From Octopus sinensis (taxonomy: Eukaryota), in the NCBI RefSeq assembly GCF_006345805.1, contig NC_043009.1, forward strand, positions 24,738,001-24,802,000: a stretch of DNA of 64,000 nucleotides, in the 5' to 3' direction. A program made the position numbers and the translations under genes. This document shows positions 46,515-48,552 of this stretch, one piece after another (within the stretch, counting starts at the first letter, position 1; the number at the start of each line of letters is the position of its first letter). Below the pieces are notes generated by a model, which worked only from the letters and a program-made list of their open reading frames with translations, searched no databases and was not told the origin of the DNA.

Positions 46515-48552
46515 TATTTCATAAAATTTGTCATCATAGACAGTACAAAGAGTGTGTAGCTTTGCGGACTGGACAAACACATTAATGAATGAAAATGAAA
46601 TAGAATTAATAAATGAGAGACGAAACCCAACACCCGCCGATTGGATTTTTCTCGAAAACACATTTTCTTTTTTTAAAAATCAATATGAGGTTTCAAACCT
46701 CTTACAAGAAGGAGGCACTAAAACCTCTTACTTAACATGTTTTTTGTTTCTTTTTTAAAACACACAATTGAGGTTATAAACCACTACAAATAATACAATA
46801 AGATGAGGTTTCAAACCCTGTAACGAGGATCTTTCACTTCCTACTCTTCGATATATCCATCGATATATTCATCATTATCTTCAATGCCGCTTGAGTTCCT
46901 GTATCCCGCCACTTCCCATGCCTCACTCATGTAGGACATGTAAGTCGTGTAAGGGCAACCCGGCCATATGCGACACTCCTCCCCAAATCCTTTAAGCCAT
47001 TCCCACAAGGGAAACCTTATGACCTCCACAGCTATCTGCGGAGGCCATTCGAGATCCCGTGTGAAGGGCATATCTACTGTCTCTTTATGTTCTACTATTT
47101 TTTCCACCTCCCCGCCCTTGTAGAAAAAGATAATTAATTGATCATCTTTAAGGGTGGGGGTGGTTTCTTCCACCGTGGGCGGCACAACTTCGGGACATGC
47201 AGACGGCACATCATCTCCCCACTGAGATTACTCGTTCTTCTTCCTTCTTTTTTTTCTTTTCTTCCTGGCGTCGGGAGAGTGGAGCTCTTCCACTTTGTCC
47301 GGAGACTCTCCCCCGCCTCCCGAACCCTTAGGTTCCTTCGGCGGGCAACTATTGTTGCCCGCCTTCTTCCTTTTTAATCCTTTTTGAGTTGAGGAGGCTG
47401 AAGCCTCCTCGACCACATCCACCTCTCCCTTTGACCGGGTAGGGGAGGTGGAATCTAGTGACTGTTCCAGGACCTTACCATGGTCCTGGGGCAGTTCCTT
47501 TTAATGTGGCCTGGCTGCAGGCACGAGTAACACTTGGGGGGACGTCCCTCAAGTATCACCAGATACCTGCAGCCAGCCATTTTCAAGAAATCTGGAAAAA
47601 CCAGTTCCGTTGCGGCCGATGGGGTCCACAGGGTCAAAATCGCTTTTGACCCTTCCCAATCGATCCGGCAATACCCTTACATTTAAGAGCCTGGGCCCGC
47701 CATCCCCCAGTCCCCGTCGGATGGTATCTTCAATCCAATCCGCTTCGGTGTCCGGGGGCAACCCACATACCAGGCTCGTATTAATTTTCTTCCACAATAT
47801 GATGGAAGGAACAGAATATCCTTGCCTTCTAAAGGCTGACTCGCAAACTGGCGAGCCTTTTCCCCGTTGTCAAACAGCAACCATACGGTTGCATGTTTGA
47901 CACCACGGGATATATATTTTAAAGAGGACAAATGTTATTTAAGTTCATTTTTTATGACTTGTTTTGGGAAGACGGTGATGGAATTAAGAACATTAGAATA
48001 CGTTCTAAGTACCATCGTCTTCTCCTCCATATCTTTTAACCAATGCTTAGGCGGGTTAATTTCCCACACTAAGACAGAGTTTTTCTTTTTAAGTTCCTTC
48101 TCTGCCATGTCAAAAAACAGTTCAAAAGACAGTCTGCCAATAAATTAAACCGAATAAAAATAAAACAAAATAAAAGAGGAGTGGAGGAAACTGAAATTAA
48201 AGTATTGAAAAGAATGAACCAAAATTTAGAAAGAAAGAAAAAATAGAAGAAGGGAAAAGTAAAAGAAAAACCTCACAAATAGCACAGACAGGGGATCCAA
48301 GAAGGTAACCCAAAAAGGTAATCCAAATGGCTTATTCTTATTTTTCTGGCGAGATACGCCCACTAGAATTTACAAGAAAATTTTTCAAGCAAAAATTCTC
48401 AATTCACCGCTACGGTGATGAGAACCCAGTATCTTGCTCGCTATAGCGAGCCATAATTGACAATTTTTCTTTTTGTTCTTTTTTTCTATTCACGGAGCCG
48501 TAACTCACATCTTCTCACTGTAACAGTCCAGACCAACTAGTGTCGCATTCTG
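46515..48552 (-). mobile_element. ORF1-only non-LTR retroelement (HAL1-like, Tx1/L1-related) with a 16-bp TSD
   Basis: TSD GATAAGCAAGCTACTT (46499-46514) and GGTAAGCAAGCTACTT (48553-48568). Single ORF1-like frame with about 440 bp of 5' UTR and about 325 bp of 3' UTR. No room for ORF2. Confidence 0.85.
46841..48108 (-). pseudogene. Tx1/L1-type ORF1 (RRM-like region + CCHC zinc knuckle), disrupted
   Basis: MAEKELKKKN... start at 48108, then VWLLFDNGEKARQFASQPL, VCGLPPDTEADWIEDTI and LVILEGRPPKCYSCLQPGHIKRNCP (CX2CX4HX4C), followed by a basic/acidic tail. One in-frame stop and several frameshifts. Confidence 0.85.

What the first reader, a model, noticed from the sequence alone, without database searches (positions are those of the whole stretch)
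46515..48552. Complete ORF1-only retroelement (HAL1-like) defined by a 16-bp TSD
Seen: the 2038-bp insert has both ends fixed by a 16-bp TSD. It contains a 5' UTR, one ~420-codon gag-like ORF1 (RRM-like region plus CYSCLQPGHIKRNC knuckle) and a short 3' UTR, with no endonuclease or RT. Established: LINE copies normally lose their 5' end and keep the RT end, and ORF1-only HAL1 elements are known mainly as L1 derivatives. Inference: a non-autonomous Tx1/L1-related family that supplies its own RNA-packaging protein and borrows ORF2 in trans. I do not know of one described from cephalopods.
Basis: partly seen in the sequence, partly recalled or inferred. Interest (0 to 1): 0.8.

Follow-up and report, generated by a model that had tools for sequence, protein, structure and literature searches.

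The report
Decayed ORF1-only LINE inside a SINE
A 2-kb jumping-gene copy that carries only an RNA-binding gene and no copying enzyme sits cleanly inside a short repeat of an octopus-type genome; it is real but dead, and such "half-LINE" parasites are already known from mammals, flies and mosquitoes.

Summary
The insert is real. Window 46515-48552 (minus strand) interrupts a ~200-bp SINE-like repeat. Six uninterrupted copies of that repeat in the same window show the empty site. The target-site duplication is 16 bp with 15/16 matches.

The insert holds a 444-nt leader, one ORF1 and a 326-nt tail. It has no endonuclease, no reverse transcriptase and no poly(A). ORF1 has two RRM domains (AlphaFold plus Foldseek) and one CCHC knuckle (Pfam), which makes it a Type I LINE ORF1p.

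The frame is broken by three frameshifts and two stop codons, so this copy is dead.

Only one close relative exists among 5.8 billion proteins: a 3'-truncated copy in Octopus sinensis. Comparing the two gives dN/dS = 0.25, so both descend from lineages in which ORF1 was functional. More distant ORF1 relatives sit in full L1/Tx1-type LINEs of octopuses, directly upstream of an APE-RT ORF2.

I could not test whether a propagating ORF1-only family exists, because no cephalopod genome was searchable. No partner LINE sharing the 3' tail was found.

ORF1-only LINE derivatives are a known kind (HAL1, HeT-A, Ag-Sponge). The finding is a plausible new member and of modest interest.

The parts
46337..46514 (-). 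3'-side half of the host SINE-like repeat (repeat positions ~45-221), including the left TSD copy
   Evidence: blastn to other copies in the window at 79-87% identity; alignment with six intact copies
46499..46514 (.). Target-site duplication, left copy: GATAAGCAAGCTACTT
   Evidence: 15/16 identical to 48553-48568; present once in uninterrupted repeat copies
46515..48552 (-). Whole inserted element, 2038 bp, sense strand is the minus strand
   Evidence: Lies between the TSD copies; absent from six paralogous repeat copies; G+C 43% against 34.5% for the window
48109..48552 (-). 5' untranslated leader, 444 nt
   Evidence: Runs from the 5' junction to the ORF1 ATG at 48108; only the ~60 nt before the ATG resemble the O. 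sinensis copy
46841..48108 (-). ORF1 pseudogene, about 424 codons when stitched. Lesions: in-frame stops at 47937-47935 and 47230-47228; frameshifts near 47770, 47660-47664 and 47488
   Evidence: Three-frame translation and stitching guided by the O. sinensis homologue P0001, 61% aa identity
47800..48018 (-). RRM domain 1 (about residues 31-103)
   Evidence: AlphaFold2 pLDDT >90 with a beta-alpha-beta-beta-alpha-beta pattern; Foldseek matches tandem-RRM proteins
47545..47787 (-). RRM domain 2 (about residues 108-188); crossed by two of the frameshifts
   Evidence: conserved block in the family alignment A2
47491..47532 (-). CCHC zinc knuckle CYSCLQPGHIKRNC
   Evidence: Pfam PF00098, E=3.9e-6, 27.1 bits against a cutoff of 20.8; profile hits to retroviral nucleocapsid knuckles in PDB
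46841..47490 (-). Lys-rich linker plus an orphan C-terminal region of ~125 aa ending in an acidic tail
   Evidence: Open 122-aa stretch; the first ~40 aa are conserved in the O. sinensis copy (tblastn E=1.3e-5); no other homologue; pLDDT <50; not matched by an HMM of the C-terminal motif of autonomous-LINE ORF1s
46515..46840 (-). 3' untranslated region, 326 nt, no poly(A) or microsatellite tail; holds an internal ~18-nt repeat containing a GGTTTGAAACC palindrome, 118 nt apart
   Evidence: its fold is not more stable than shuffles (z = -1.27); no coding remnant of ORF2
48553..48568 (.). Target-site duplication, right copy: GGTAAGCAAGCTACTT
48553..48594 (-). 5'-side 'head' of the host SINE-like repeat (repeat positions ~19-58)
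   Evidence: blastn at 92.5% identity to the intact copy at 25340-25560

Best explanation
This is a dead, full-length copy of a non-autonomous LINE derivative that encodes only ORF1.

SHOWN. [quoted passage not shown] The element has no endonuclease or RT of its own, so those activities came from elsewhere. Its ORF1 is a Type I LINE ORF1p: two RRMs, one CCHC knuckle, a basic linker and an orphan C-terminus. The copy has since decayed (three frameshifts, two stops).

INFERRED. The supplier of endonuclease and RT was an L1/Tx1-type LINE of the host. Such LINEs carry distantly related ORF1s in octopus genomes, and 13 recently active L1-Tx1 families are reported in O. vulgaris. While the lineage was alive, ORF1p bound and packaged its own transcript in cis, and that particle borrowed ORF2p in trans. 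This is the model proposed for HAL1, HeT-A and Ag-Sponge. Because there is no poly(A) tail, the partner would have to recognise the 3'UTR itself rather than an A-tail.

The low dN/dS between this copy and the O. sinensis copy shows that the lineage kept ORF1 functional over a long divergence. It does not show that the lineage lacked ORF2 throughout that time.
For: Insertion and TSD: empty site seen in six paralogous repeat copies, TSD 15/16. No ORF2: Pfam finds only zf-CCHC; tblastx with an octopus ORF2 finds nothing; no open frame in the 326-nt tail. ORF1 type: AlphaFold pLDDT ~90 for residues 10-210 and Foldseek hits to tandem RRMs. LINE affiliation: a profile search of 1.84 billion representative proteins gives 97 hits. 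The relatives examined lie directly upstream of APE/RT/zf-RVT ORF2s in O. sinensis (L002), O. vulgaris (L005), a Logan contig (L004) and a marine metagenome contig (L003). The L005 ORF2 matches human L1 ORF2p at E=2e-71. Clean architecture: ORF1 keeps its own stop and all of ORF2 is absent, whereas in the autonomous relatives ORF2 starts 5-400 nt after ORF1. A random deletion would rarely do this. Second lineage: the O. sinensis copy is 70% nt and 61% aa identical, with dN/dS 0.25 (bootstrap 0.17-0.36) and dS ~1.0. Precedent: ORF1-present non-autonomous LINEs have arisen repeatedly (PMC5786205, PMC5753468, PMC13534243). L1-Tx1 activity in octopus: PMC13282606.
Against: Only one copy with this architecture has been seen. 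The only other relative (L001) is truncated inside the C-terminal region, so it does not show whether its lineage lacked ORF2. No LINE sharing the 5' or 3' UTR was found. The closest autonomous ORF1s are only ~23-27% identical, so the parent LINE is unidentified. Purifying selection on ORF1 is equally expected if both copies come from ordinary full-length LINE subfamilies. The C-terminal 125 aa have no homologues and could partly be a by-product of a deletion junction. No genome-wide census, Repbase or Dfam look-up was possible.
Confidence: 0.5

Rival explanations
1. One-off derivative. An ordinary full-length L1/Tx1-type LINE lost ORF2 once. This could have happened by an aberrant or spliced transcript before insertion, or by a genomic deletion after insertion. 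The copy was never part of a propagating ORF1-only family.
For: Only a single copy with this structure was observed. The protein search found just one close relative among 5.8 billion clusters, so there is no sign of abundance. All examined relatives of the ORF1 family are in ORF2-bearing LINEs. Inactivation of LINEs by internal deletion rather than 5' truncation is documented in another animal (title of PMC2861651).
Against: The deletion would have to remove all of ORF2 while leaving ORF1 with its stop codon and a 326-nt tail; no ORF2 remnant is detectable. A full-length 5' end with a TSD is itself uncommon for LINE copies. Scarcity in protein databases is expected for repeat-masked pseudogenes and says little about copy number.
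Confidence: 0.35
2. Alternative for the shared SINE junction only. The 5' 40 nt of the SINE-like repeat next to both the window copy and the O. sinensis copy is not a preferred target. In L001 it is either a repeat copy broken at a generally fragile or modular position, or a repeat head carried along by 5' transduction or template switching.
For: Two further repeat copies in the window are broken at the same position with no element present (4133 and 16108), so the position breaks for other reasons too. In L001 the element's 5' end cannot be defined independently, because the leaders are only 47% identical in alignment. No second half of the repeat or second TSD copy exists in L001.
Against: In the window the head, the element and the rest of the repeat with a 16-bp overlap form a textbook insertion, not a chimera. 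The two heads are 90% identical (35/39) while the adjoining leaders are saturated, as expected for two independent repeat copies. dN/dS 0.25 argues against the two loci being duplicates of one dead insertion. Tx1-clade LINEs are known for target preference, including for other transposons (PMC4494074).
Confidence: 0.5
3. Retrocopy (processed pseudogene) of a host gene that was domesticated from a LINE ORF1, as L1TD1 was in mammals, rather than a copy of a mobile element's own transcript.
For: The O. sinensis relative is annotated as a protein-coding gene, LOC115225585. Domesticated ORF1 genes exist (PMC4161310).
Against: There is no poly(A) tail. The O. sinensis 'gene' is itself a truncated copy with a degenerate knuckle (first Cys replaced by Phe) beside a repeat fragment. 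No conserved single-copy orthologue appears in other octopus proteomes.
Confidence: 0.05

Closest known systems
HAL1 ('half-L1') of mammals
   Same: Non-autonomous LINE derivative of 5'UTR + ORF1 + 3' end with no ORF2, presumed to borrow ORF2p in trans; arose several times independently (PMC5753468, PMC5786205).
   Different: HAL1 derives from mammalian L1 with a Type II ORF1p (coiled coil, single RRM, CTD; Pfam Transposase_22) and ends in poly(A). This element has a Type I ORF1p (two RRMs plus CCHC), no Transposase_22 hit and no poly(A). HAL1 is a proven multi-copy family; here only one complete copy is known.
HeT-A and other ORF1-only telomeric elements of Drosophila (Jockey clade)
   Same: Gag/ORF1-only non-LTR elements that depend on the RT of related elements. 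ORF2 loss is recurrent, and ORF1-only lineages can give rise to new ORF1-only lineages (PMC13534243). Their ORF1 also carries CCHC knuckles.
   Different: Different clade, and telomere-specific head-to-tail arrays. This is an interstitial insertion with a TSD inside a dispersed repeat.
Ag-Sponge of Anopheles (CR1 clade)
   Same: Listed with HeT-A and HAL1 as an ORF1-present 'bipartite' non-autonomous LINE (PMC5786205).
   Different: CR1 clade. No sequence comparison was made here.
Octopus L1/Tx1-type autonomous LINEs (loci L002 in O. sinensis, L005 in O. vulgaris; 'L1-Tx1' families of PMC13282606)
   Same: Their ORF1 has the same core (two RRM-like domains, CCHC, basic linker) and hits the profile at E down to 5.6e-19. 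They are the likeliest kind of ORF2 supplier.
   Different: Only ~23-27% aa identity. No nucleotide similarity in the UTRs. They end in (ATT)n or A-rich tracts and carry a conserved C-terminal 'LK..FP.DVG' motif that this ORF1 lacks.
Target-specific Tx1-clade LINEs (Tx1 in Tx1D, Keno in U2 snRNA genes, crocodilian Tx1-Mar in Mariner-N4_AMi)
   Same: A preference for one sequence, often another transposon (PMC4494074), would explain why both known copies abut the same position of the same SINE-like repeat.
   Different: Here n = 2 and the second junction is one-sided. Specificity is not demonstrated, and the element has no endonuclease of its own to examine.

Membership tests
ORF1-present non-autonomous LINE (HAL1 / HeT-A / Ag-Sponge kind) | Unit consists of 5'UTR + ORF1 + 3' end and lacks endonuclease/RT | tested here: met
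   Anatomy; Pfam finds only zf-CCHC; no ORF2 similarity
ORF1-present non-autonomous LINE (HAL1 / HeT-A / Ag-Sponge kind) | Multiple dispersed copies with the same internal junction and ends, each with its own TSD | not testable with these tools
   No cephalopod genome collection is searchable. One complete copy (window) and one 3'-truncated relative (L001) are known. The metagenome scan found nothing.
ORF1-present non-autonomous LINE (HAL1 / HeT-A / Ag-Sponge kind) | ORF1 maintained by purifying selection between lineages | tested here: met
   Nei-Gojobori dN/dS = 0.25 (bootstrap 0.17-0.36) over 280 codons against the O. sinensis copy. dS ~1.0 is near saturation, and the result does not distinguish ORF1-only lineages from full-length ones.
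ORF1-present non-autonomous LINE (HAL1 / HeT-A / Ag-Sponge kind) | An autonomous partner LINE sharing the 3' end (or 5' and 3' parts) | tested here: inconclusive
   No UTR similarity to the LINEs in L002 and L004 by blastn. The L002 and L005 3' ends were also read and compared by eye, with no resemblance. The ORF2 fragment in the window gave no hit in the element self-search. Only a handful of loci were sampled.
HAL1 proper (L1-derived, mammalian) | Type II ORF1p (Transposase_22: coiled coil + RRM + CTD) and a poly(A) tail | tested here: not met
   No Transposase_22 hit at E<=1. The fold is two RRMs plus CCHC. The 3' end is ...TTTTATGAAATA.
Type I LINE ORF1p (Khazina & Weichenrieder classes, as summarised in PMC5203782) | At least one RRM together with a CCHC zinc knuckle | tested here: met
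   zf-CCHC E=3.9e-6; two RRM folds, Foldseek probability 1.0 to UP1/NONO/IMP3 RRM12
L1/Tx1 clade of non-LTR retrotransposons | Clade is defined by RT phylogeny (APE + RT, often a C-terminal zinc-binding domain) | not testable with these tools
   The element has no RT. Indirect evidence only: distant ORF1 relatives are linked to APE-RT-zfRVT ORF2s whose best PDB match is human L1 ORF2p at 2e-71. Tx1 versus L1 was not resolved.
Target-primed reverse transcription insertion (APE-type LINE machinery) | Target-site duplication of roughly 5-20 bp flanking the insert, and an intact empty site elsewhere | tested here: met
   16-bp TSD at 15/16; six uninterrupted paralogous sites
Target-specific Tx1-type element | Independent copies inserted at the same nucleotide position of the same target sequence | tested here: inconclusive
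   Both known copies abut repeat position 57/58 in the same orientation. L001 lacks the 3' junction. Two repeat copies are broken at the same position without the element.

The most novel reading that the evidence does not exclude
Two long-diverged ORF1-only lineages (dS ~1), kept alive by selection on ORF1 alone, home to a single position of an abundant octopod SINE-like repeat. They would do so by using the sequence-specific endonuclease of a Tx1-type partner. That would be a protein-coding, target-specific, non-autonomous LINE family in a mollusc, and an addition to the recorded ORF1-only lineages (mammalian L1, the Drosophila Jockey clade and mosquito CR1).
Probability: 0.2. Interest if true: 0.55.

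Novelty: new member of a known kind. Interest (0 to 1): 0.3.

Why it matters
If a real family stands behind this copy, it would show that loss of ORF2 with retention of a selected ORF1 also happens in Type I-ORF1 (L1/Tx1-like) LINEs of molluscs. That would add a fourth independent lineage to HAL1, HeT-A and Ag-Sponge. It would also strengthen the view that ORF1p by itself gives a transcript preferential access to a partner's ORF2p.

Cephalopod genomes are rich in LINEs and SINEs, and their LINE activity has been linked to the nervous system (PMC9115989). Knowing which elements are parasites of which matters for interpreting that activity. The possible homing to one position of a SINE would give a simple natural system for studying endonuclease specificity.

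As it stands, one dead copy plus one truncated relative is a lead, not a discovery.

Tried and rejected
1. Other copies in the window: none. blastn of the element finds only itself.
2. Close protein relatives: one, P0001. An exhaustive profile search finds nothing between P0001 and distant LINE ORF1s.
3. The C-terminal 122-aa ORF searched alone: no homologue. Exact-sequence look-up: not on record.
4. I thought by eye that the C-terminus carried the 'LK..FP.DVG' motif of autonomous-LINE ORF1s. An HMM of that motif scores it no better than shuffles, so I rejected the idea.
5. A shared 3' tail or 5' leader with the LINEs in L002 and L004 by blastn, and with the L002 and L005 3' ends by eye: none. 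One 60-nt hit in L001 at 16.5 kb dissolved on alignment.
6. An ORF2 remnant in the element or downstream of the L001 copy: none. The only ORF2-like piece in L001 lies 9.5 kb upstream and is unrelated.
7. A second TSD copy or the rest of the repeat in L001: absent.
8. Scan of JGI metagenome contigs for relatives: 185 pattern matches, none confirmed.
9. The host repeat as a tRNA-derived SINE: no support from ARAGORN or Rfam, even at E<=1. I therefore call it only 'SINE-like'.
10. A stable 3'UTR structure: z = -1.27, not notable.
11. Pfam does not detect the RRMs by sequence.
12. Bao & Jurka 2010 on HAL1 could not be read. The third homology search was left unused, because naming the clade of distant ORF2s would not change the verdict.
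Full report
1. WHAT IS IN THE SEQUENCE

The region 46515-48552 is an insertion. Its two flanks are the two halves of a ~200-bp SINE-like repeat. At least ten further copies of that repeat lie in the window. I aligned the flanks with six copies that run through the site without interruption (near 59.4, 25.4, 20.4, 15.2, 33.9 and 40.2 kb). The left flank ends ...GATAAGCAAGCTACTT. The right flank resumes GGTAAGCAAGCTACTT-ACCACACAGCC.... The intact copies carry this 16-mer once. 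The duplication (46499-46514 and 48553-48568) matches at 15 of 16 positions, with 14 contiguous. The paralogous empty sites make chance an irrelevant explanation.

2. ANATOMY

The element reads on the minus strand.
- 5' leader: 444 nt (48552-48109).
- ORF1: ATG at 48108, stop at 46843-46841.
- 3' tail: 326 nt (46840-46515), ending ...ACAAATTTTATGAAATA, with no poly(A) or microsatellite tail.

The ORF is not intact. A 424-residue product is obtained only by changing frame three times (near 47770, 47660-47664 and 47488) and reading through two stop codons (47937-47935 and 47230-47228). I set the frame changes using the O. sinensis homologue as a guide. The longest truly open segment is 122 aa. 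This copy is a pseudogene.

3. THE PROTEIN

Pfam recognises only the CCHC knuckle (PF00098, E=3.9e-6). An AlphaFold2 model, built on a 34-sequence family alignment, is confident over residues ~10-210 (block means 84-95) and poor beyond residue ~230.

Foldseek against the PDB returns tandem-RRM proteins at probability 1.0 and E down to 4e-5: hnRNP A1 UP1, NONO/SFPQ, IMP3 RRM12 and Prp24. TM-scores are low because the query is 424 residues long and the orientation between the two domains differs.

The protein is therefore two RRMs, a CCHC knuckle, a Lys-rich linker and a ~125-residue C-terminal region. This is the Type I ORF1p architecture, which in non-mammalian animals goes with the Tx1 group (PMC5203782).

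The C-terminal region has no detectable relatives, apart from ~40 residues conserved in the O. sinensis copy. My impression by eye that it shares the 'LK..FP.DVG' motif of other LINE ORF1 C-termini failed an HMM test against shuffles.

4. NO ORF2

Nothing in the element resembles an endonuclease or RT. The 326-nt tail has no open frame.

5. RELATIVES

Among 5.8 billion protein clusters there is a single close relative: P0001, the 'uncharacterized protein LOC115225585' of Octopus sinensis. It is 61% identical once the window frame is stitched correctly.

Its locus (L001) shows a copy that is 70% identical in nucleotides across ORF1. It continues out of frame into the start of the C-terminal region and then breaks off into unrelated, microsatellite-like sequence. 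P0001 has lost the first cysteine of the knuckle. It too is a decaying element copy, not a host gene.

An exhaustive profile search of 1.84 billion representative proteins gives 97 further hits, all distant (best E=5.6e-19). They include proteins of O. sinensis, O. bimaculoides and O. vulgaris, Logan contigs and marine metagenome contigs.

Four of their loci were examined, and in each the ORF1 is followed at once by an ORF2:
- L002 (O. sinensis): an APE domain and a zf-RVT domain.
- L003 (marine metagenome): APE plus the start of RT, 11 nt after ORF1.
- L004 (Logan contig): the start of ORF2.
- L005 (O. vulgaris): a head-to-tail array with an intact 1,132-aa ORF2.

The L005 ORF2 matches human L1 ORF2p over residues 3-868 at E=2e-71, and R2 proteins only at ~1e-24. 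The ORF1 family therefore belongs to L1/Tx1-type LINEs. O. vulgaris is reported to have 13 recently active L1-Tx1 families (PMC13282606). The host SINE-like repeat also occurs in the O. sinensis loci, so the window comes from an octopod.

6. SELECTION

A codon alignment of 280 codons between the window copy and the L001 copy gives pS 0.56, pN 0.22 and dN/dS 0.25 (bootstrap 0.17-0.36). Most of their divergence therefore accumulated while ORF1 was functional. The two are descendants of distinct active lineages, not two neutral duplicates of one dead insertion. dS (~1.0) is near saturation. The result cannot say whether those lineages lacked ORF2.

7. MECHANISM

Shown: insertion by a staggered-cut, TSD-forming process typical of APE-type target-primed reverse transcription; an RNA lacking ORF2; enzymes supplied from elsewhere.

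Inferred: the supplier was an L1/Tx1-type LINE. While alive, the element's ORF1p coated its own RNA in cis, and the particle captured a partner's ORF2p. This is the model proposed for HAL1, HeT-A and Ag-Sponge (PMC5786205, PMC5753468, PMC13534243). The lack of an A-tail points to a partner that recognises the 3'UTR.

The clean structure argues for a shaped, transmissible form rather than a random deletion. ORF1 keeps its stop, every trace of ORF2 is gone, and the 5' end is full-length. In the autonomous relatives, by contrast, ORF2 starts 5-400 nt after ORF1. This is an argument from plausibility only.

8. WHAT COULD NOT BE SETTLED

No cephalopod genome could be searched. Copy number, uniformity of ends, the partner LINE and catalogue status all remain unknown. 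No examined LINE shares the leader or tail. The JGI metagenome scan was empty. My estimates are 0.5 for a true ORF1-only family, 0.35 for a one-off ORF2-less derivative, and small remainders for a retrocopy of a domesticated gene and for other explanations.

9. A LEAD ON TARGET CHOICE

In L001 a fragment of the same SINE-like repeat (positions 18-57, same orientation) ends within 2 nt of the position where the window element begins. It lies 513 nt upstream of the ATG, against 444 nt in the window. The two repeat heads are 35/39 identical, while the adjoining leaders are only 47% identical in alignment. That is what two independent repeat copies would look like. Tx1-clade LINEs are known for target preference, including for other transposons (PMC4494074).

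There are caveats. L001 has no 3' junction, and its 5' end cannot be defined independently. Two other repeat copies in the window are broken at the same position with only microsatellite upstream. The position may therefore be fragile or modular for other reasons. I rate real target preference at roughly one in three to one in two.

10. COMPARISON, NOVELTY AND SCORE

The element works like HAL1 but is not HAL1: it has a Type I rather than Type II ORF1p, no poly(A), and a non-mammalian host. ORF1-only non-autonomous LINEs are an established kind with at least three independent clade origins. This would be a new member from an L1/Tx1-like lineage in a cephalopod. I found no description of one in the searchable literature, but I could not consult Repbase or Dfam. 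Interest is modest at 0.3.

Noticed in passing
window 4133 and 16108 (repeat copies 4133-4286 and 16108-16263): Two further copies of the host SINE-like repeat start abruptly at repeat position ~54-57, the same place where the element is inserted. Only (TA)n/(CA)n microsatellite lies on the 5' side. This could be a hotspot, a modular boundary of the repeat, or remnants of other insertions.
   Followed up: partly
window 22841-23619 (-), tail at 22645-22743: C-terminal fragment of an unrelated LINE ORF2 (Pfam zf-RVT, E=4e-5), followed on its sense strand by a ~100-nt (AAT)n tail. It has no similarity to the L002 ORF2 or to the element.
   Followed up: partly
L001 10001-10846 (O. sinensis CM016886.1): The annotated gene LOC115225585 (P0001) is a truncated retroelement ORF1 with a degenerate zinc knuckle (first Cys replaced by Phe) beside a SINE fragment. 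It is likely a mis-annotated TE pseudogene.
   Followed up: yes
L005 4058-14700 (O. vulgaris OX597840.1): Head-to-tail array of full-length L1/Tx1-type LINEs. One ORF2 is intact at 1,132 aa (4058-7456). In the next unit ORF2 is split in two, and ORF1 is frameshifted before its C-terminal domain. An A-run lies just upstream of each ORF1.
   Followed up: partly
L002 ~9700-9830 and ~15350-15390 (O. sinensis CM016872.1): The autonomous LINE carrying P0002 is bounded on both sides by (ATT)n. This suggests insertion into, or tailing with, this microsatellite. Its 3' end shares CCCTTGTGG..AATAAAA with the L005 LINE.
   Followed up: no
window 25340-25560 (reference copy of the host repeat): The abundant ~200-bp repeat has box A/B-like motifs by eye, but neither ARAGORN nor Rfam recognises it as tRNA-related, even at E<=1. 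Its origin is unresolved.
   Followed up: partly
window 46841-47209 (-): The C-terminal ~125 aa of ORF1 is an orphan. It is the longest open stretch of the element, ends in an acidic tail, has a low AlphaFold confidence and has no homologues apart from a short stretch in L001.
   Followed up: yes
L003 1886-4471 (marine metagenome ERZ907901 contig): Eukaryotic LINEs in marine metagenome contigs encode very long ORF1s (700-860 aa). They have a disordered N-terminus, the same RRM-CCHC core and a well-conserved C-terminal domain (...YRALK..FP.DVG...) that matches no Pfam family.
   Followed up: no
window 7934-8033: A run of 100 N (assembly gap). The window as a whole is 34.5% G+C and crowded with (TA)n, (CA)n and (ATT)n microsatellites.
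   Followed up: no
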